In this document: piece after piece, positions 23,825 through 61,682 of the stretch
Numbering within the stretch: position 1 is the first letter of the stretch
Layout: each line of letters opens with the position of its first letter
From: Mustelus asterias
Lineage: Eukaryota
Reading direction: 5' to 3'
Assembly (NCBI RefSeq): GCF_964213995.1
Contig: NW_027590554.1
Location: 124,001-188,000, forward strand
Length of the DNA stretch: 64,000 bases
The notes under the pieces: generated by a model
Seen by the model: the letters and a program-made list of their open reading frames with translations, nothing else
What the model was told of the DNA's origin: nothing
Databases searched by the model: none
Program-made: the position numbers and the translations under genes

Positions 23825-24162
23825 TGAATAGANNNNNNNNNNNNNNNNNNNNNNNNNNNNNNNNNNNNNNNNNNNNNNNNNNNNNNNNNNNNNNNNNNNN
23901 NNNNNNNNNNNNNNNNNNNNNNNNNNNNNNNNNNNNNNNNNNNNNNNNNNNNNNNNNNNNNNNNNNNNNNNNNNNNNNNNNNNNNNNNNNNNNNNNNNNN
24001 NNNNTGGGCAGACGGACGGATGGACGGACGGATGGACGGACGGACGGATGGATGGGCGGATGGATGGACGGATGAATGGATGGGCGGATGGACGGGCCAA
24101 CGGACGGACGGATGGATGGATGGGGAGAGGGAGAAGGACGGACGGAGGAATGGACGGACGGA
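23765..24162. repeat. Microsatellites (GATA/GA and GGAC/GGAT) flanking a 172-N assembly gap (23833-24004)
   Basis: Seen directly in the sequence. Confidence 0.95.
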
Positions 24163-41393: not shown

Positions 41394-41471
41394 AGGACTT
41401 GTTCGGGACCTCTTGCGACTTTGTGGATCTTAATACCCAAAGCCAGAATGGTACCCCCAGACCTACGAGCC
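41394..41471 (-). tRNA. Intron-containing tRNA-Pro(TGG) pseudogene (T arm deleted)
   Basis: Reverse complement GGCTCGTAGGTCTGGGGGTACCATTCTGGCTTTGGG-[tattaagatccacaaagt]-CGCAAGAGGTCCCG. Confidence 0.75.
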
Positions 41472-43576
41472 ACCGTGAGGAAAGCAGTTTAGGCATTACA
41501 TTCCCATTGCCATCAAAATCTGATCAGACATCTGCAGTGAAAGTGAAAGTGCTGAAAAAAGGCGGGAAGTCAGGACTCTTGTGTGCACAGGGAAAGAAAG
41601 TTCCATTTTTCACCTCCGTGACGTGTAATTTAAACTGGAAATGGTTAGAAATGTACGACGTTTTAAACAAGTGACATCCAGGAGGGAAGAAACATAACAA
41701 CAGCTGATGAGGTGGAAGTCAGGAGAGATTAGATGGGAGACACAAAAAAAAAATCACAAAGTGATTCCACCATAGAATGAGGCCAGTCCAAAGTTCTTTA
41801 CAGGAGTCAAGGGCTAAAGGGGAACCTGTGGATGTGCTGTACATAGATTGCACAGCTGTCACATTGATGTGGTTGTGGGTTTTGAAAATTGACAATTACA
41901 CTTAAGAACATAGGAACTAAGATCAGAAGTAGGCAAATACAGCTCTTCGAGCCTGCATTCAATCAGTTCATGACTGATCTCTCCCTGGTCACAAATCTAC
42001 GTCCCCACCTGTTCTCTTTCTTGAAAACGTTTAAAGATTCAGAATCCACCATGCTATGGGGCAGGAAATTTCACAAATCCACGACTGTCAGCAATACGTG
42101 GTTACTCAGCATCTCGGTTTTACGTCCACCGCCTCTCAACCTATATATGAAACACTAGCTCTGACAAAATGTCATCTCGACTCGAAATATTGGCTCTATC
42201 CTTTCCCCACAGAGGCTGTCAGACCAGCTGAGATTTTCCAGCTTTTCCTGGGGGGGTTTTCAGAGTCCAGCACCCACAGTATCTTGCTTTAATATACATG
42301 TGACCTCTTCTTCTCGATTGCCCGAAAAGATGAAACATTTGGTCTACATTTATTCGATCAATTCTTTTACAATTTTATATACCTCGATCACTTCAGCATC
42401 TGGTGGGACGATTTCACTCACTGTCAATTTCTTGTCCCAGCGAACTTAATTGGTGTCCTCACTGGCTGAAGGAAGTACCTATGTTCCATACAAACAGGAC
42501 ACTTTGAAGGAGAAACTTCGATCGAGTGAAAACGATCAGGGATGAAAATAATAAGCAAAGGGATATAATTCGAAATCCTCAGTTCACCAGTTACCCTGGT
42601 AGTCCACTGGTTTGTGTTTAGCACTCTCCCAATGATATTTGGTTTCAACTCTCGCTCAAGAAGAAAATATTCTCAGCAAACGATTAAAAATAAGGTGATT
42701 TACTCTTTGATCGAAAGCAGATCTACTAGAATCAGCCGAGTGAGGATTGTACGTTTACATCAGAGCTGGAAATGTCACATGTTCAACAGTTCAAGAACAA
42801 ACACAGAAAGAGAAGGGCAGTGATGGTCTGCAAAGCACGAGCAATAGAGATGGTGATGCAAGGGAAAGTCTGGATTATGAATTGCCAAATTTTTACCGAT
42901 TACACTGTCAGCGAAATATGAAATTTTTCCCTCTGCATTGAAAAACATTTGGAAATGTTTCTGTCCAGTTCTGAACCGTCGGAAGCGAAAGTGTTAACTG
43001 CAGTGTATTGATTGCTGTGTGTTTTCATTGGCTGAATACATCACTGTGTTGAAGCAGAATGTGCCATTTTGCAGGAAAAACTTGTTTGTGGTGAAAGTAT
43101 GAAAATAAAAATAACAAAGGTAGCGTGGATAAAGCAAATTCTAAAACACACTGTAAACTGCTGCTCTGGGGGTTAGAGATTGACATTTTCACTGATGTTT
43201 TGATTGCTGGTCAGTAAATGAAGATTTATTCCTCGCATCCAAACCGTGAAAACAGATGTCAGTTATTGCCTGGTGGAACATATCAAACACAATCTCGCCT
43301 CGTGTCCGGAAGTGAAGACTTCCAACAGGAAGTTTTCTTGTCATTTATGTCAGGAGTTTGGGAAACAGACGAGGCTAAGGACAGTTTAAATGGTGCCGGG
43401 CCTTTATTGCAGCTCATTGTGTTTCTGACTGGAGATGATTTCTGTTTGTTGAACAGTTCAGGATGAGTTGACTCAGTGAAGGTGCAGGCTCCTGACGGCC
43501 TTTCCCAAATCAGTTGCATCCAATGTATTTCAGTAACAATATCAGCAAATTGCAGGATTAGCATGATTATTTTTCT

Positions 43577-43664
43577 GCTCCCGTAGCCGAACGGTCTAAG
43601 GCGCTGGATTAAGCCTTCAGTTTCTGAGGCGGTGTGAGTTTGAGTCTGAATCCCACCGCTGCCA
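43577..43664 (+). tRNA. tRNA-Leu(AAG) pseudogene
   Basis: gtagccgaacggtctaaggcgctggattaagccttcagt...gaatcccaccgctgcca. Confidence 0.8.
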
Positions 43665-43936
43665 GAGTCAATTTAAGTTTTGGTCCTTTCGGCAGAATTC
43701 TAACAGCTCGGATATGTTTCCTCCCTGCTGGATTTCACTTGTTTTAAACTTCCTACATTTCTAACCATTCCCAATGTTAATGAAAAGTCTTGGAGGTGAA
43801 AGGTGAGCTTTGTTTCCTGTGCACACTCTGTATTACTTCCTGAGATTTTTCCAGCATTATCACCGTTCAATGCAGGTGTATGATCCGCTTTGGATGGCAG
43901 TGAAAATATATTTAGTTGACTTGCATTGATCACGAT

Positions 43937-44025
43937 TGCTATTTCGCCTAGGGGTATGATTCTCGCTTTGGGTGCTAAAATCCGCAAGCCTGCGTGAGGT
44001 CCCAGTTCAAATTCTGGGTAAGCCC
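43937..44025 (+). tRNA. Intron-containing tRNA-Pro(TGG), probably a pseudogene
   Basis: CTAGGGGTATGATTCTCGCTTTGGG-[tgctaaaatccgcaagcc, 43973-43990]-TGCGTGAGGTCCCAGTTCAAATTCTGGGTAAGCCC. Confidence 0.82.
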
Positions 44026-44865: not shown

Positions 44866-44930
44866 GCCCGGCTAGCTCAGTCGGTAGAGCATGAGACTCT
44901 TAATCTCACGGTCGAGCCCCACGTCCGGCT
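44866..44930 (+). tRNA. tRNA-Lys(CTT) pseudogene with T-arm deletion
   Basis: gcccggctagctcagtcggtagagcatgagactcttaatctca matches tRNA-Lys, then a deletion. Confidence 0.85.
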
Positions 44931-48433: not shown

Positions 48434-48505
48434 AGGTTCCAACGAAATGTGAACTCGGATAGCTGGATTCACAGTCCAGAGTGCTCACCATTACATCACG
48501 GAACA
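48434..48505 (-). tRNA. tRNA-Gln-derived pseudogene (anticodon mutated to GTG)
   Basis: Reverse complement GTTCCGTGATGTAATGGTGAGCACTCTGGACTGTGAATCCAGCTATCCGAGTTCACATTTCGTTGGAACCT. Confidence 0.75.
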
Positions 48506-52939: not shown

Positions 52940-53011
52940 AGGCTCCAACGACAAGTGAACTTGCGGCCCTGGTTTGCAAAACTAAGGCTCTAACCACTGA
53001 GCTATGGAGCC
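52940..53011 (-). tRNA. tRNA-Thr(TGT)-derived pseudogene
   Basis: Reverse complement GGCTCCATAGCTCAGTGGTTAGAGCCTTAGTTTTGCAAACCAGGGCCGCAAGTTCACTTGTCGTTGGAGCCT. Confidence 0.78.
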
Positions 53012-55943: not shown

Positions 55944-56074
55944 ATTGTAACCTTGGCGATTCTGTAGGTCGACTGTATTCGCCACTTTGAAATTTGAACA
56001 ATCTGAGATGCCAGATGGAAAAGCACGTTTGTGGTCCCCGTATTTTGGGGCTTGAAGCACAGCTGCCGCAATGT

Positions 56075-56147
56075 GCTTGGCTAGCTCAGTCGGTAGAGCA
56101 TGAGACTCTTAATGTTAGGGTCGTGGGTTTGAGCCCCACTTCGGGTG
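56075..56147 (+). tRNA. tRNA-Lys(CTT) pseudogene
   Basis: gcttggctagctcagtcggtagagcatgagactcttaatgttagggtcgtgggtttgagccccacttcgggtg. Confidence 0.85.
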
Positions 56148-56424
56148 TCATTGTTTTTAAACTTTTCTGCTTTCCTGGGTGAATTTCAGCTCTCCATTCC
56201 TCCGGCAGTGACACCGCCTAAACTGAGTCTTTCTCCATGCCGCTTTGTGAATACATCAGGTACTGGTTTCTGAATGAAAGCTGCCTGTACTCCATTGGAA
56301 GTCGAAGAGTTTGGTGCTTAATTCAGCGAGAAGTTTGTTTGTAAATCATTTAGTATCATATTTGGACCGAGATCGGGGATATAATGCTGTCAGTGGAAAT
56401 AAGAAACACTACAAAAAGTAGATC

Positions 56425-57263
56425 AGTTGGAGACTTGGGGGGAGAGATGGCAGATGGAGTTTCGTCCGGACAAATGTGAGGTAATGCATTTTGGAAGGTC
56501 CAATACAGATAGGAAATATACAGTAAATGGCAGAACCCTTCGGAGTATTGATAGGCAAAGGGATCTGGGTGTACAGGTACACATGTCACTGAAAGTGCCA
56601 ATGCAGGTGGGGAAGGTAGTCAAGAAGGCAGACGGCATGATTGCCTTCATCGGCCGAGGTATTGAGTTAAAAAATTGGAAAGTCATGTTGACGCTTTATT
56701 GAACCTTAGTGAAGCTGCACTTGGAATATGGTGTTCAGTTCTGGTCGCCGCACGACCAGAAGGATGTGGAGGCTTTGGAGAGGGTACAGAAAAGATTTAC
56801 CAGGATGTTGCCAGGTATGGAGGGCATTAGCTATGAGGAGAGTTTGGAGAAACTTGGTTTGTTCTTACTGGAGCGAAGGAGATTGAGGGGAGATCTGATA
56901 GAAGTCAACAAGATTATGAGAGGCATGGACAGAGTGGATAGTCAGGAGCTTCTTTCCCAGGGTGGAAGAGTCAATTACTAGGGGGCATAGGTTTAAGGTG
57001 CGAGAAGCAATTTTTAAAAGAGACGCACAAGGCAGGGTTTTTACACAGAGAGTGGTGGGTGCCTGGAACTTGTTGCCGGGGGAGATAGTGGAAGCGGATA
57101 CGGTAGTGACTTTTAAGGGGCGTCTTGACAAGTACATGAATGAGATGGGAATAGAGGGATATGGTTCCCGGAAACGTAGGGGTTTTTAGTTAAGTTGGGT
57201 AGCATGGTCGGTGCAGGCCGGGAGGGCCGAAGGGCCTGTTCCTGTGCTGTAGTTTTCTTTGTT
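56425..57263 (+). mobile_element. CR1 3' fragment, degenerate
   Basis: WQMEFRPDKCEVMHFG...; its tail continues after 58478. Confidence 0.92.
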
Positions 57264-57264
57264 G

Positions 57265-58478
57265 ACAAAGAACAAAGAACAATACAGCACAGGAACAGGC
57301 CCTTCGGCCCTCCAAGCCCGTGCCGCTCCCTGGTCCAAACTAGACCATTCTTTTGTATCCCTCCATTCCCACTCCGTTCATATGGCTGTCTAGATAAGTC
57401 TTAAACGTTCCCAGTGTGTCCGCCTCCACCACCTTGCCTGGCAGCGCATTCCAGGCCCCAACCACCCTCTGTGTAAAATATGTCCTTCTGATATCTGTGA
57501 TAAACCTCTCCCCCCCCCCCCCCGCCCCTTCACCTTGAACCTATGACCCCTCGTGAACGTCACCACCGACCTGGGGAAAAGCTTCCCACCGTTCACCCTA
57601 TCTATGCCTTTCATAATTTTATATACCTCTATTAAGTCTCCCCTCATCCTCCGTCTTTCCAGGGAGAACAACCCCAGTTTACCCAATCTCTCCTCATAAC
57701 TAAGCCCCTCCATACCAGGCAACATCCTGGTAAACCTCCTCTGTACTCTCTCCAAAGCCTCCACGCCCTTCTGGTCCTGTGGCGGTCAGAACTGGACGCA
57801 GTATTCCAAATGCGGCCGAACCAACGTTCTATACATCTGCAACATCAGACCCCAACTTTTATACTCTATGCCCCGTGCTATAAAGGCAAGGATGCCATAT
57901 GCCTTCTTCACCACCCTTTCCACCTGTGACGTCACCTTCAAGGATCTGTGGACTTGCACACCCAGGTCCCTCTGCATATCTATACCCTTTATGGTTCTGC
58001 CATTTATCGTGGAGCTCCTCCCTACATTATTTCTACCAAAATGTATCACTTGGCAGTGATCAGGATTGAACTCCATCTGCCATTTCTTTGCCCAAATTTC
58101 CAGCCTATCTATATCTTTCTGTAGCTTCTGACAATGCTCCTCACTATCTGCAAGTCCTGCCAATTTTGTGTCGTCCGCAAACTTACTGATCACCCCAGTT
58201 ACACCTTCTTCCAGATCGTTTATATAAATCACAAACAGCAGAGGTCCCAATACAGAGCCCTGCGGAACACCACTAGTCACAGGCCTCCAGCCGGAAAAAG
58301 ACACTTCCACTACCACCCTCTGTCTTCTGTGACCAAGCCAGTTCTCCACCCATCTAGCCACCTCCCCCCTTATCCCATAAGATCCAACCTTTTTCACCAG
58401 CCTACCATGAGGGACTTTGTCAAACGCTTTACTAAAGTCCATATAGACGACATCCATGGCCCTTCCTTCGTCAACCTT
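57265..58478 (-). mobile_element. CR1 3' fragment inserted into the tail of the preceding CR1
   Basis: VDEGRAMDVVYMDFSKAFDKV...KFADDTKL; (ttctttg)n tail. Confidence 0.95.
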
Positions 58479-58760: not shown

Positions 58761-59780
58761 AATTACGGCTTGCTCGTTTTTAAAAGAAAAGATCTAATTG
58801 ATATATGAAACCTTTGGCTTTCATTTTCTTTTCAGACTTATTTTCACCAGAAACAAGTTTCTCCTTGAAATTGTCATGTTTAACTTGAACAAAATTGACT
58901 TCTTAGCCAGTGGAAACACGAATGCTGTTAACTGGAACAAGAAATTGGCAGTGAGATTAAATAGTCCCATAAGCTGCTGATGTGTAACGTTCAATTTCCA
59001 AGCCTCACCAACCTCATCATTGCAACTCATGTGATACGTATGAGGCCACACAAGGCAGATATCCGACACTGAAAGCAATTGATGCAGATCCTTTGTTCAA
59101 TATTTTCTTGTTGCATCTCTTTCTGTTTCTGTTGTTGCCTCTCCTTCAGCTCCCTCTGACCGTCCAGCACCTAGAATCAATTAACTTCTTGATGCAGACA
59201 CAAAACATTGGTGAGACCGAGCTTTACCTGGAATGGAGGGAGGATCGGGATTGTAGGACACAAGGTTGTGTGAAGAGAGGGAGTTCACAGATGGCAGGGG
59301 ATAGAGGCACCAGGATCTTAGCTTCCTAATTCTCCATGACACAGATTACAGGAATTTGCACAGTGCAAATTATCCGCAGTCACGCTCTCCTTTCAGTCTT
59401 TTGTACGGAGTTACTTTTTGTCACCTTCGAAGCATTGCTGCAGTTGCTCAGGGTATTGCCAATACCTCATTTGGAATACTGCGTCCAGTTTTGGGGTTTT
59501 GCATTTAAGACAGGATGTACTTCTAATGGAGACGGTACAACAAAACTTCACTAGGTTATTCTCTGAGATGAAGGGCTTGTCCTATTATGAGAGGTTGGGT
59601 AAATTGGGCTCAATTTCTCTGGAGTTCAGCAGAATGATATACTATCTCATTGATACCTACACAAGAATGAATGGATTAAATCGGGTGCATTCTGAGATAT
59701 CAAAGAATTTAAAATATGGGACACAGTCTCAGGATAAGGGACGAGGACTTTAGGACATTTAGTACTGAGATGAGGAGAAT

Positions 59781-60093
59781 TTGTTTTGTTTATATATCCA
59801 ATTCAATCCACTCAAAGTCCAATTCAAAGCCTCAGCAAGTGAGACATTCCCGATCCAAGCTGACGACAGATGGTTCCCACGTCCTGTCTTGGGCTTGATC
59901 TACATGGTCCAAGCTAATTGGAGCAGGCATTGCACCTCCTCCAAGGCTTGATCTCATTTGCATTTTAGCCAAAAGGCCGATATGCCGCTTTAAAAAATTG
60001 CTTATAATGAAGCTACATTGTAACCTTATGACTTCAACCAAGTAGAGCATGTCGACACTACACTTGATCTTAGCCAAAAGGCCGATAAGCGAT
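59781..60093 (-). mobile_element. U2 snRNA-headed SINE-like element, unit A
   Basis: Reverse complement starts ATCGCTTATCGGCCTTTTGGCTAAGATCAAGTGTAGTGTC (U2 nt 1-40), then a non-U2 body and an A-rich tail; GAGGAGAAT on both sides. Confidence 0.8.
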
Positions 60094-60102
60094 GAGGAGA
60101 AT

Positions 60103-60637
60103 TTTTTAAAATGTTTTTTTATTCCAATTCAAATGTTTACGCAGAGAGTGGTTGGGGTGTGGAATGGACTGCCTGCAGTGATAGTGAGTCAGACACTTTA
60201 GAAACATTCAAGCGGTTATTGGATAGGCACATGGAGCACACCAGGATGATAGGGAGTGGGATAGCTTGATCTTGGTTTCAGATAAAGCTCGGCACAACAT
60301 CGTGGGCCGAAGGGCCTGTTCTGTGCTGTACTGTTCTATGTTCTATGTTCTAAATCAAGTCCAATTCAGAGTCACAACAAATTGAGACATTCCCGATCCA
60401 AGCTGACAAGACAGGGCTCTCCCCTCCCGTCTTGGGCCTGAACTACATGATCCAAGCTGATTGGAGGAGGCATAGCTCCTCCTCCAAGGCTTGATCTCAT
60501 TTGTATCTTAGCCAAATGTCCGAGATGCCGCTTTTAAAAATTGCTTATAATTAAGCTATAATGTAACCTTATGACTTCCACCAAGTACAGCATGTCGATA
60601 CTAACACTTGATCTTAGCCAAAAGGCCGAGAAGCGAT
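60103..60637 (-). mobile_element. U2 snRNA-headed SINE-like element, unit B (interrupted by a CR1 3' end at ~60135-60351)
   Basis: Reverse complement starts ATCGCTTCTCGGCCTTTTGGCTAAGATCAAGTGTTAGTATC; same body as unit A. Confidence 0.8.
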
Positions 60638-60646
60638 GAAGAGAAT

Positions 60647-60972
60647 TTTAAAAAACATACTTTTCCAGTTCAATCAAATGAAGTCCAATTCAGAATGTCA
60701 ACAATTTGAGGCATTCCCGATCCAAGCTGACAAGACAGGGTCTGCAACCCCTGTCTTGGGCCTGATCTACATGAGCCAAGCTGATTGGAGTGGGCGCAGG
60801 TCTTCCTCCTCCAAAGCTTGATCTCATGTGCATCTTAGCCAAAATTCCGGGATGCCGCTTTAAAAAAATGCTTCATATGAAAATGAAGCTTAAATGTGAC
60901 CTAACGACCTCAACCAAGTGCAGCATCCTATCCATACTACACTTGATCTTAGCCAAAAGGCCGAGAAGCGAT
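60647..60972 (-). mobile_element. U2 snRNA-headed SINE-like element, unit C
   Basis: 60972-60934 is a perfect U2 nt 1-39: ATCGCTTCTCGGCCTTTTGGCTAAGATCAAGTGTAGTAT. Confidence 0.8.
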
Positions 60973-61682
60973 GAGGAGAAATTACTCCACTCAAAATGTT
61001 GGGAATCGTTGGCATTTTCTCTTCCAGAAAGTTCGGGATGCTCCATCATTGAACACATTTTATTGTGGGATAGACAGATTTTTGATCTCTCCGGCAATGA
61101 AGGAGAGCGGGTGGGAAAATAGAACTTAAACAAATGTTCAGCCATGAATTAATGTTTCAACACTGAATCTTATGTTTAATAGCACAATTGAAACATGTAT
61201 ATACTTAATTTAATCTGTATGAAATGAATATTTATTAACTAAGTTACGTTGGCAACACTGGGAGACATTTTTATGGGCGCCCACGGATCCATTACCTACC
61301 CGCAAATGTTTGCGCATGAATGCTGCTGGGGAGAGAAGAGTATAATTTCCGTTCCTGGATTGTTTCGAACTACCAATCACTCCTTTAATAACCGAGCTGC
61401 GACAGATATCTTAAATTAGGGCGTTAATGATTTCTCTACAGATCCGACCAAATTCTATTGCTGCAAAAGTTGATCCAGAACTACAGGATGGCCACACCGT
61501 TTACAGTTCCATACAAGTCCCTTTGGTTATTTTGTTCCCACATGGTTGCTGTGTGTGGTGGGTATTCCCTTTCTCCGAGGAGCATGCAGTAAAATGAATC
61601 CATGTCTCTTACCACAGAGAGAAATTAAACGGTAAAGAATGGAATTGACCAGCAGAAGCCCAAGGCTACATTACCTTCAACT

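What the first reader, a model, noticed from the sequence alone, without database searches (positions are those of the whole stretch)
59781..60972. U2 snRNA-headed SINE-like family in a shark genome
Seen: three related ~310-330 bp minus-strand units start exactly at U2 nt 1 and follow U2 to nt 39-40, including stem-loop I and the branch-point pairing sequence GTAGTA. They then switch to a shared non-U2 body and end in an A-rich tail with flanking direct repeats. Known: snRNA-headed SINEs (SINEU) were described from crocodilians, and Keno (Tx1) and Utopia retrotransposons insert into U2 genes near this position. Inference: this is a non-autonomous retroelement born in a U2 gene, transcribed from the external U2 promoter of a master locus and mobilised by a poly(A)-type LINE (Tx1/L1) rather than CR1. 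I do not know of a described shark family like this, but could not search.
Basis: partly seen in the sequence, partly recalled or inferred. Interest (0 to 1): 0.9.

Follow-up and report, generated by a model that had tools for sequence, protein, structure and literature searches.

The report
U2-headed retroposon stacked three times
Three copies of a short mobile element that begins with the first 40 letters of the U2 splicing RNA sit head to tail at one spot inside an older mobile element; it looks like a counterpart of the snRNA-headed SINEs known from crocodilians, which interests specialists but is not a new kind of thing.

Summary
Confirmed. On the minus strand, three units of 314-327 nt (60972 to 59780) each begin with U2 snRNA nt 1-40, share a body and end in an A-rich tail.

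- **Layout:** the units are stacked head to tail, separated and flanked by four copies of one 8-nt repeat (11 nt counting an ATC shared with the element start). Unit B carries a later 217-bp LINE 3' fragment.
- **Body:** it holds a second, older copy of U2 nt 4-33. By eye, an arm pairs with U2 nt 26-39.
- **Target:** the head ends where Keno (Tx1) and Utopia LINEs enter U2 genes. By eye, the target, inside an old CR1-like LINE, resembles U2 nt 30-53, with the 3' junction at pseudo-nt 38/39.
- **Best reading (0.6):** a non-autonomous, Keno/Tx1-dependent, U2-headed retroposon of the same kind as crocodilian SINEU, which also stack at one site in a transposon.
- **One insertion or three:** heads and repeats are less diverged than bodies (P 0.005-0.013), which favours three insertions over local duplication.
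- **Not tested:** dispersal. Only unchecked scan notes report other copies; the scan found this before on other DNA of this genome.

New member of a known kind; interest 0.5.

The parts
60973..60980 (-). Direct repeat copy 1 (TTCTCCTC), upstream of unit A; belongs to the target
60646..60972 (-). Unit A (327 nt). Head, U2 nt 1-40: 60972-60933. Fold-back arm: 60926-60913. T7 run: 60868-60862. Second U2 module (nt 4-27): 60855-60832. Three hairpins: about 60827-60771, 60765-60722 and 60720-60690. Then GAATTGGA-type repeats and an A-rich tail.
   Evidence: sequence; Rfam U2, 48.7 bits; second module, 0 of 300 shuffles reach its score; consensus hairpins; arm read by eye
60638..60645 (-). Direct repeat copy 2 (TTCTCTTC, one change), between units A and B
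60102..60637 (-). Unit B (319 nt of element, interrupted). Head: 60637-60597, with one inserted base. Arm: 60593-60580. T5 run: 60540-60536. Second U2 module (nt 4-33): 60528-60498. The tail is split into 60370-60351 and 60133-60102.
   Evidence: (45.9 bits)
60134..60350 (+). Later insertion in the tail of unit B: a 5'-truncated 217-bp 3' end of the abundant CR1-like LINE, opposite in orientation to the units, ending in (TGTTCTA)n
   Evidence: matches to other copies; nhmmer E 3.6e-44, model 1-213; 7-nt tandem repeat at 60332-60352. The two halves of the unit B tail join into a complete tail when compared with units A and C.
60094..60101 (-). Direct repeat copy 3 (TTCTCCTC), between units B and C
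59780..60093 (-). Unit C (314 nt). Head is the first 40 nt, with 2 changes. Arm: 60050-60037. T6 run: 59997-59992. Second U2 module: 59985-59955. Then hairpins, GAATTGGA-type repeats and an A-rich tail.
   Evidence: 45.7 bits; second module; 12-nt repeat at 59797-59829
59769..59779 (-). Direct repeat copy 4 (TTCTCCTC) plus ATC. The same three letters begin the element, so they are either microhomology at the 5' joint or part of an 11-nt duplication.
59436..59697 (+). Old CR1-like LINE that holds the target. This part is statistically supported; the sense strand is +, so the units lie antisense to it.
   Evidence: nhmmer E 1.6e-19 against a model of 5 other copies in the window, model 306-566. 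The register puts the repeat at about model position 224-234.
60981..61092 (+). Possible other half of the same old LINE (its 3' side). Support is weak.
   Evidence: fixed-register global alignment of 120 nt: 13-31 of 500 shuffles reach the score, z 1.8-2.3. Against: no nhmmer hit at E up to 10; local score not above shuffles.

Best explanation
Each unit is a copy of a short, non-coding, poly(A)-type retroposon whose RNA begins at the first base of U2 snRNA.

Layout of a unit, in order:
- U2 nt 1-40 (stem-loop I and the branch-point pairing stretch).
- A 14-nt arm that pairs back onto U2 nt 26-39.
- A small hairpin.
- A U-run between two hairpins.
- A second, older copy of U2 nt 4-33.
- Three longer hairpins.
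- GAATTGGA-type repeats and an A-rich tail.

Inferred origin: a Keno-type (Tx1 clade) LINE sat at its usual site in a U2 gene, after nt 38-40, and was transcribed together with the upstream U2 piece. A shortened derivative kept that head.

Inferred mobilisation: the Keno/Tx1 endonuclease and reverse transcriptase act in trans. The enzyme nicks a site that looks like U2 nt 30-53, here carried by an old CR1-like LINE. The A-rich tail is primed at the position matching U2 nt 38/39. The 5' end is joined 8-11 nt further on, helped by the shared ATC, which duplicates TTCTCCTC(ATC).

The same site was most likely used three times, because one repeat copy keeps the recognised half of the site. This produced the stack repeat-A-repeat-B-repeat-C-repeat. 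Later a 5'-truncated LINE fragment landed in the tail of unit B.

What is shown: the layout, the repeats, the head and its end point, the second U2 module, and the LINE nature of the downstream flank. The fold-back arm and the U2-like target are read by eye, not computed.

What is inferred: the partner enzyme, the origin in a U2 gene, the order of events, and that copies exist elsewhere.
For: - **U2 head:** it is present in all 3 of 3 units, with near-perfect matches to model positions 1 to about 40.
- **Head end point:** the head ends at nt 40. Section 6 of PMC4640811 states that U2 downstream of Utopia insertions starts at nt 39 and that Keno has the same 3' flank.
- **Retroposition marks:** there are A-rich tails and four copies of an 8-11-nt repeat bounding the three units.
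- **Flank:** the downstream flank is a LINE (E 1.6e-19). All 5 reverse-transcriptase ORFs among the 8 ORFs scanned lie antisense to copies of the repeat I call CR1-like.
- **Target look-alike:** read by eye, the site without the stack against the Rfam U2 consensus line matches U2 nt 30-38 at 8 of 9 positions just before the 3' junction. It matches nt 39-50 at 8 of 12 just after it, allowing one extra A. Overall that is 19 of 24 aligned positions with two gaps through nt 53, on the same strand as the units.
- **Second U2 module:** nt 4-33 recurs at unit positions about 110-140 in 3 of 3 units, and 0 of 300 shuffles reach the score. It is already degenerate in the same way in all three while the 5' head is intact. 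That implies a lineage which gained U2 sequence at least twice, as described for SINEU-1.
- **Head and repeat conservation:** the heads carry 4 changes where body rates predict 11.2 (P 0.013). Heads plus repeats carry 5 where 14.2 are predicted (P 0.005). This fits three insertions of already diverged copies.
[quoted passage not shown] The paper attributes this to sequential insertion by Keno-related Tx1-Mar LINEs, some of which carry U2 heads.
- **Pol III unlikely:** internal runs of 5-7 T argue against a full-length pol III transcript, as the paper argues for SINEU.
- **Leads only, not support:** scan notes report similar elements, and U2-headed Tx1 LINEs, elsewhere in this genome.
Against: - No copy of the body exists outside the stack in 64 kb.
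- Nothing I could run shows copies elsewhere. A body-ORF protein search, two metagenome scans, one viral scan and a findings look-up by sequence all came back empty.
- No Tx1 or Keno LINE is in the window, and no LINE here shares the units' 3' end.
- The upstream flank is only marginally LINE-like, so the 'empty site' rests mainly on the downstream side.
- The target look-alike and the fold-back arm were read by eye, not computed.
- Structure shows no compensatory change: 0 of 63 predicted pairs.
- The excess of variable columns outside pairs (21 of 126 paired against 48 of 123 unpaired) is circular, because the structure was chosen on the same alignment. With structures folded from one unit at a time, only 2 of 6 comparisons reach p<0.05.
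- The tails of A and B share an odd T-run interruption that C lacks, which would suit local duplication of A/B.
- Units B and C score just under Rfam's gathering score.
Confidence: 0.6

Rival explanations
1. One retroposition, then local amplification. A single U2-headed copy inserted once with an 8-11-nt duplication. Unequal exchange or slippage between the two repeat copies then made it three. The element is the same kind of thing, but the stack says nothing about site preference.
For: - The layout repeat-unit-repeat-unit-repeat-unit-repeat is also what exchange between flanking repeats gives.
- There is no copy elsewhere in the window.
- The tails of A and B share a T-run interruption.
- Unit-to-unit distances are compatible with a clock on a tree ((B,C),A).
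Against: - Heads and repeats are much less diverged than bodies: 5 changes against 14.2 expected, P 0.005. Equal age and neutral decay in place would not give that.
- The A-rich ends differ more than the bodies do.
- The published precedent reads the same layout as sequential insertion.
- Exchange between repeats of 8-11 nt is rare (general knowledge).
Confidence: 0.25
2. A one-off chimeric retrocopy. A LINE reverse transcriptase copying some cellular RNA switched template onto U2 snRNA, as in the U6, U1 or U2 chimeras known in human. The product was then duplicated locally, and there is no family.
For: Such chimeras with duplications and tails are known (Discussion of PMC4494074). I could not show other copies.
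Against: - The body itself holds an older, degenerate U2 nt 4-33 copy, so U2 sequence was gained at two different times.
- The junction falls at the Keno/Utopia site rather than at a random point.
- The target mimics that same U2 site (by eye).
- As a lead only, many scan notes describe like elements elsewhere.
Confidence: 0.08
3. A small tandem cluster of variant U2 genes or pseudogenes, or the seed of a U2-derived satellite. The repeat is then part of the unit, not a target duplication.
For: Rfam aligns the whole 192-position model over about 160-190 nt of each unit, with a U-run where U2 has its Sm site and a terminal hairpin where U2 has stem-loop IV. U2-derived satellites exist (PMC4640811, passages seen).
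Against: - Beyond nt 40 the alignment has low posterior values and no sequence identity. Stem-loops IIa and IIb are absent, and the scores sit at or under the gathering score.
- There are only three units, bounded by a LINE on at least one side, with the repeat continuous with that LINE.
- The units carry A-rich tails.
Confidence: 0.05

Closest known systems
SINEU (SINEU-1, -2, -3) of crocodilians (Kojima 2015, PMC4494074; Results and Discussion read)
   Same: - Short non-coding retroposon with a U2-derived 5' head and a poly(A)-type tail.
- Duplications of about 10 bp.
- U2 pieces added more than once at the 5' end.
- Internal T-runs that speak against pol III.
- Copies stacked in tandem around one duplication at a preferred site inside another transposon.
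- Partner taken to be Keno-related Tx1 LINEs.
   Different: - The host is different (taken to be a shark; not verified here).
- The target lies in a CR1-like LINE, not Mariner-N4_AMi.
- The head ends at the Keno insertion point, which points to co-transcription with a U2 gene rather than the template switch proposed for SINEU.
- An arm pairs with U2 nt 26-39.
- No sequence comparison with SINEU consensus sequences was possible here.
- The paper states that no SINEU was detected outside crocodilians.
Keno and Tx1-Mar LINEs (Tx1 clade, apurinic-type endonuclease)
   Same: Keno inserts in U2 genes with the downstream U2 starting at nt 39. Some Tx1-Mar families carry U2 heads and home to a site in a transposon. 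The head end point and the U2-like target here fit that enzyme.
   Different: The units are about 320 nt with no ORF of known kind. No Tx1 LINE is in the window. The link is inferred from junctions only.
Utopia (NeSL clade, restriction-like endonuclease) U2-targeting LINEs (PMC4640811)
   Same: Same insertion point in U2. Non-U2 insertions at U2-like sites are mentioned for crocodilian Utopia in the legend of S4 Fig (seen; the figure itself was not seen).
   Different: Utopia makes 0-bp or 20-bp duplications in the taxa described, against 8-11 bp here. An A-rich tail and short duplications fit an apurinic-type LINE better.
snRNA chimeric retropseudogenes made by LINE-1 template switching (as summarised in PMC4494074 Discussion)
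   Same: An snRNA 5' part is joined to another sequence, with a tail and duplications.
   Different: - Those are single events. As I recall, not from any call, they usually carry the full-length snRNA.
- Here U2 stops at nt 40.
- A second, older U2 piece lies inside.
- The same site was used repeatedly.

Membership tests
SINEU (snRNA-headed SINE) | 5' head derived from U1 or U2 snRNA | tested here: met
   Rfam U2 matches at the start of 3 of 3 units, with model positions 1 to about 40 near-identical.
SINEU (snRNA-headed SINE) | Short (<500 bp) non-coding retroposon | tested here: met
   Units are 314-327 nt. One frame is open over 53-72 codons in all three, but no relative was found.
SINEU (snRNA-headed SINE) | 3' poly(A) tail and short target-site duplications | tested here: met
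   Tails are interrupted and A-rich. An 8-11-nt repeat bounds every unit. The tails are not pure A.
SINEU (snRNA-headed SINE) | Many dispersed copies with the same structure (a family, not a single event) | not testable with these tools
   Only one stack of three in 64 kb. Other searches empty. Unchecked scan notes report more copies.
SINEU (snRNA-headed SINE) | Repeated 5' addition or duplication of snRNA pieces | tested here: met
   A second, degenerate U2 nt 4-33 module is present in 3 of 3 units; 0 of 300 shuffles reach its score.
SINEU (snRNA-headed SINE) | Preferred target inside a transposon, with tandem copies sandwiching the duplication | tested here: inconclusive
   The sandwich layout is present and the flank is a LINE. 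One locus cannot show a preference. The other LINE copies that run through the same site (4 of the 5 shown; the fifth appears to end there) show no break.
SINEU (snRNA-headed SINE) | Sequence relation to the crocodilian SINEU bodies | not tested
   No SINEU consensus sequence was available in any tool.
Non-autonomous derivative of a Keno/Tx1 LINE | U2 part ends at the Keno insertion point (downstream U2 starts at nt 39) | tested here: met
   The head runs to nt 40 in B and C and to nt 39 in A. The site is taken from PMC4640811 section 6.
Non-autonomous derivative of a Keno/Tx1 LINE | Inserted at a U2 or U2-like site in the orientation of the U2 motif | tested here: met
   By eye, against the consensus line: 8 of 9 positions before and 8 of 12 after the 3' junction, on the same strand. 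Not computed.
Non-autonomous derivative of a Keno/Tx1 LINE | Shares 5' and 3' ends with an autonomous Tx1 LINE of the same genome | not testable with these tools
   No Tx1 LINE in the window. Leads only: s1-892310, s1-892088, s1-892366.
Functional U2 snRNA gene | Full-length conserved U2 (stem-loops IIa/IIb, Sm site, III, IV) | tested here: not met
   Beyond nt 40 the Rfam alignments have low posterior values and little identity. Scores of 45.7-48.7 sit around the gathering score of 46.
Template-switch chimeric retropseudogene | Single event: the snRNA 5' part joined once to another RNA | tested here: not met
   The body contains an older second U2 piece, and the site is occupied by three units.

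The most novel reading that the evidence does not exclude
The element is more than a passenger with a borrowed 5' end: its RNA is a U2 snRNP mimic.

- It starts at the U2 cap site and keeps stem-loop I.
- It masks the branch-point pairing stretch in a 14-bp fold-back, so that it cannot compete with U2 in splicing.
- It carries a single-stranded U-run between two hairpins at the position of the U2 Sm site.

Such an RNA could be made by the snRNA-type pol II system and exported. It could then be loaded with an Sm ring and re-imported by the snRNP route. That would give a retroposon a private path back to the nucleus.

Repeated homing to one U2-like site could also place copies where a neighbour's tail helps to start the next transcript.
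Probability: 0.07. Interest if true: 0.85.

Novelty: new member of a known kind. Interest (0 to 1): 0.5.

Why it matters
SINEs with snRNA heads are known in print only from crocodilians, and how they gain their heads and how they are transcribed is left open in the paper that described them.

If this element is a true family in a cartilaginous fish, the kind is either far older or has arisen more than once.

The head ends exactly at the Keno insertion point, and the target imitates that same stretch of U2. Together these would make one answer testable: the head is a relic of co-transcription with a U2 gene, and the partner is a Keno-lineage LINE that now homes to U2 look-alike sites in an abundant LINE.

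For genome annotation it also matters that these copies hit the U2 model at or near threshold and can be miscalled as U2 genes.

Tried and rejected
- **Looking for other copies.** All of the following found nothing:
  - blastn of the units against the window: nothing outside the stack.
  - Two metagenome scans and one viral scan with body motifs: 0 matches.
  - Findings look-up by sequence with the unit B body: blank.
  - Runs were listed (organism A holds 0.59, 0.42, 0.27 and 0.26 of the sampled words; organisms B to E and two runs with no organism named hold 0.11-0.13; no run is on record as RNA).
- **Upstream flank as the other half of the LINE.** Local alignment is not above shuffles (47 of 200 shuffles reach the best score). 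There is no nhmmer hit. A fixed-register global test is marginal. I keep it as weak.
- **Model in which the 217-bp LINE fragment and the downstream flank are one LINE copy split by unit C.** Rejected, because the two halves of the unit B tail join into a complete tail. The fragment's truncation point lies within a few bases of the target position, which I take as chance. By my reading, another short copy in the window (R29) seems to end near the same point.
- **RNA structure as proof of selection.** There are 0 compensatory pairs. The alignment-based stem/loop contrast is circular, and single-sequence structures give mixed results. Not used as support.
- **A snRNA-type promoter motif in the tail.** This came from a motif I recall, not from any call. 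It is not kept in all three tails, so I dropped it.
- **Coding function of the shared open frame.** There is no relative, so I dropped it.
- **Host species.** Not verified.
- **Literature.** 'SINEU' as a whole word occurs in 23 papers, 21 listed, none about sharks by title. Phrases for snRNA- or U2-derived SINEs gave 6 papers, none relevant by title or abstract start. 'Tx1' plus 'shark' gave 10 papers, 8 listed, none on this by title. 'SINEU' combined with shark terms was swamped by other terms, and no listed paper held 'SINEU'. Repbase and Dfam could not be consulted. Supplements were not opened: those of PMC4494074 (S3-S6, target maps) and PMC4640811 (S1 and S4, junctions and non-U2 sites) may bear on the comparison of target sites.
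Full report
**What is there.** Reading 61300-59500 on the minus strand shows three related units laid head to tail.
- A is 60972-60646, B is 60637-60102 and C is 60093-59780.
- They are 327, 319 (without a foreign 217-bp insert) and 314 nt long.
- Whole-unit identity is 82.6% (A-B), 87.2% (B-C) and 78.0% (A-C). The bodies have 83% mean column identity.
- Rfam's U2 model matches the start of each unit (48.7, 45.9 and 45.7 bits; gathering score 46; E 3.4e-08 to 1.8e-07 for the 1.8-kb search). At gathering level only unit A is reported in the whole window.
- In each alignment, positions 1 to about 40 (stem-loop I and the GUAGUA stretch) match almost perfectly, and the remainder is weak.

Two points need adding: the units form one stack at one site, and blastn finds no further copy of the body in the 64 kb.

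**Anatomy of a unit.**
- *Fold-back arm.* After U2 nt 1-40 comes a 4-7-nt loop and then a 14-nt arm. Read by eye, the arm pairs with U2 nt 26-39: 10 Watson-Crick and 4 G-U pairs in the form seen in B. In A one G-U has become G-C and the extra bases sit in the loop. In C one pair is broken and one has become G-U. A scan note on another piece of the genome (s1-892366) made me look for this arm. I did not fold the heads in a tool (see limits).
- *Hairpin and T-run.* A small hairpin and a run of 5-7 T follow. Rfam aligns the T-run with the Sm-site region of U2.
- *Second U2 module.* At unit positions about 110-140 lies a second copy of U2 nt 4-33. It has the same departures in all three units, and 0 of 300 shuffles reach its score in each unit (also seen).
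- *3' end.* Three hairpins are predicted on the alignment, then GAATTGGA-type repeats and an interrupted A-rich tail.
- *Open frame.* One reading frame is open for 53-72 codons in all three units, but it has no detectable relative.

**The stack and its surroundings.**
- The 8-mer TTCTCCTC precedes A, lies between A and B (with one change) and between B and C, and follows C. After C it continues with ATC, the same letters that begin the element.
- With at most one mismatch the 11-mer occurs 6 times in the window, 4 of them here. Shuffles gave a mean of 1.82, and 1 of 100 reached 6.
- The tail of unit B is interrupted at 60134-60350 by the 5'-truncated 3' end of an abundant repeat (E 3.6e-44).
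- That repeat is the antisense reading of an endonuclease/reverse-transcriptase LINE. Of the 8 ORFs scanned, 5 have a reverse-transcriptase domain and all 5 lie on the strand opposite to copies of this repeat. Its clade was not tested.
- The flank after unit C is an old copy of the same LINE (E 1.6e-19). Its register places the 8-mer at about model position 224-234.
- The flank before unit A is only marginally LINE-like.

**The target.**
- Section 6 of PMC4640811 states that U2 sequence downstream of Utopia insertions starts at nt 39 and that Keno, a Tx1-clade LINE, has the identical 3' flank. The head of the present element ends at nt 40.
- I set the site without the stack by eye against the U2 consensus line printed. 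The 9 bases before the 3' junction match U2 nt 30-38 at 8 positions. The 12 bases after it, allowing one extra A, match nt 39-50 at 8 positions.
- Through nt 53, 19 of 24 aligned positions agree with two small gaps, on the same strand as the units.
- A simple binomial estimate of my own, not a tool result, puts this far below chance for a register fixed by the junction.
- Other copies of the LINE in the window carry a weaker version of the same motif and are unbroken at this site.

**One insertion or three.** Both sequential insertion at a regenerated site and exchange between the flanking repeats give the same layout.
- *For three insertions.* At the per-unit rates measured in the bodies (0.131, 0.056, 0.093), the three heads should carry 11.2 changes but show 4 (P 0.013). 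Heads plus the four repeats should carry 14.2 but show 5 (P 0.005) (with indels counted per column gave 11.9 expected and P 0.008). This is what is expected if much of the body divergence predates insertion.
- *Against.* A and B share a T-run inside their tails.
- *Structure tests do not help.* There are no compensatory pairs and the stem/loop contrasts are mixed.
- I put three insertions at roughly two to one over local duplication.

**Is it a family?** I could not test this.
I then worked beside that stretch.
- The other routes were empty.
- The second, older U2 module argues for a lineage that copied itself over time rather than a single accident.
- The scan's own notes are unchecked and count as leads, not support. 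They hold 77 entries with the words 'U2 snRNA'. These include 337-bp elements with two U2 heads, stacks at one site in a CR1 on other pieces, and U2-headed Tx1 LINEs.

**Comparison with what is known.** The closest described thing is SINEU (PMC4494074; abstract, Results and Discussion read). SINEU has:
- U1 or U2 heads and poly(A) tails;
- duplications of about 10 bp;
- repeated 5' addition of U2 pieces, and internal T-runs;
- a strong preference for one site in Mariner-N4_AMi, with tandem copies sandwiching the duplication;
- Keno-related Tx1-Mar LINEs as drivers, some with U2 heads.

That paper reports no SINEU outside crocodilians and leaves transcription open. The present element shares every structural trait I could test. 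The differences are the host, the target (a U2 look-alike in a LINE), the head ending at the Keno site, and the fold-back arm. It is not a U2 gene, and it does not fit a one-off template-switch chimera.

**Mechanism.**
- *Shown:* the layout, the head and its end point, the second module, the repeats, the tails, and the LINE flank.
- *Read by eye, not computed:* the U2-like target and the fold-back arm.
- *Inferred:*
  - a Keno-type LINE in a U2 gene was transcribed with U2 nt 1-40;
  - a shortened derivative is copied in trans by the Keno/Tx1 enzymes;
  - the endonuclease nicks U2-like sites at pseudo-nt 38/39, the A-rich tail primes reverse transcription, and the 5' end is sealed 8-11 nt downstream with help from the ATC overlap;
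  - one repeat copy stays cleavable, so copies pile up.

**Novelty and limits.**
- Full-text searches found no report of such an element in sharks. Repbase, Dfam and the papers' supplements were not available to me.
- The host was not verified, since run names are coded.
- The verdict is a new member of a known kind, of moderate interest.

Noticed in passing
window 60134-60350 (+): The LINE fragment in the tail of unit B is truncated within a few bases of the position at which the stack sits in the older LINE copy. Another short copy (from 28993, +) appears to end near the same point. I take this as chance or a favoured truncation point.
   Followed up: partly
window 57224-57310: Two 3' ends of the CR1-like LINE abut head to head: an inverted pair of the conserved terminal stretch.
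   Followed up: no
window 31112-31183, 32375-32446, 44866-44930, 48434-48505, 52940-53011, 56075-56147: Rfam reports six tRNA matches (29.7-42.8 bits). ARAGORN, run with bacterial settings, finds only tRNA-Lys(CTT) at 56074-56149. The others may be intron-bearing tRNA genes or tRNA-derived SINE heads. A scan note describes tRNA-Pro genes with an intron at 41394-44025.
   Followed up: no
window 24212-25240 (-): An intact 342-codon ORF with a rhodopsin-family 7TM domain (Pfam 7tm_1, E 1.4e-18), next to an N run at 23833-24004.
   Followed up: no
window 59835-60050, 60375-60533, 60693-60872 (-): The same reading frame stays open for 72, 53 and 60 codons in units C, B and A. No relative was found, so it is probably chance in three related copies.
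   Followed up: partly
(runs X5-X17): Runs of four other coded organisms, and two runs with no organism named, hold 11-13% of the sampled words of 59300-61300. This could be the LINE fragment or copies of the element in related species.
   Followed up: no
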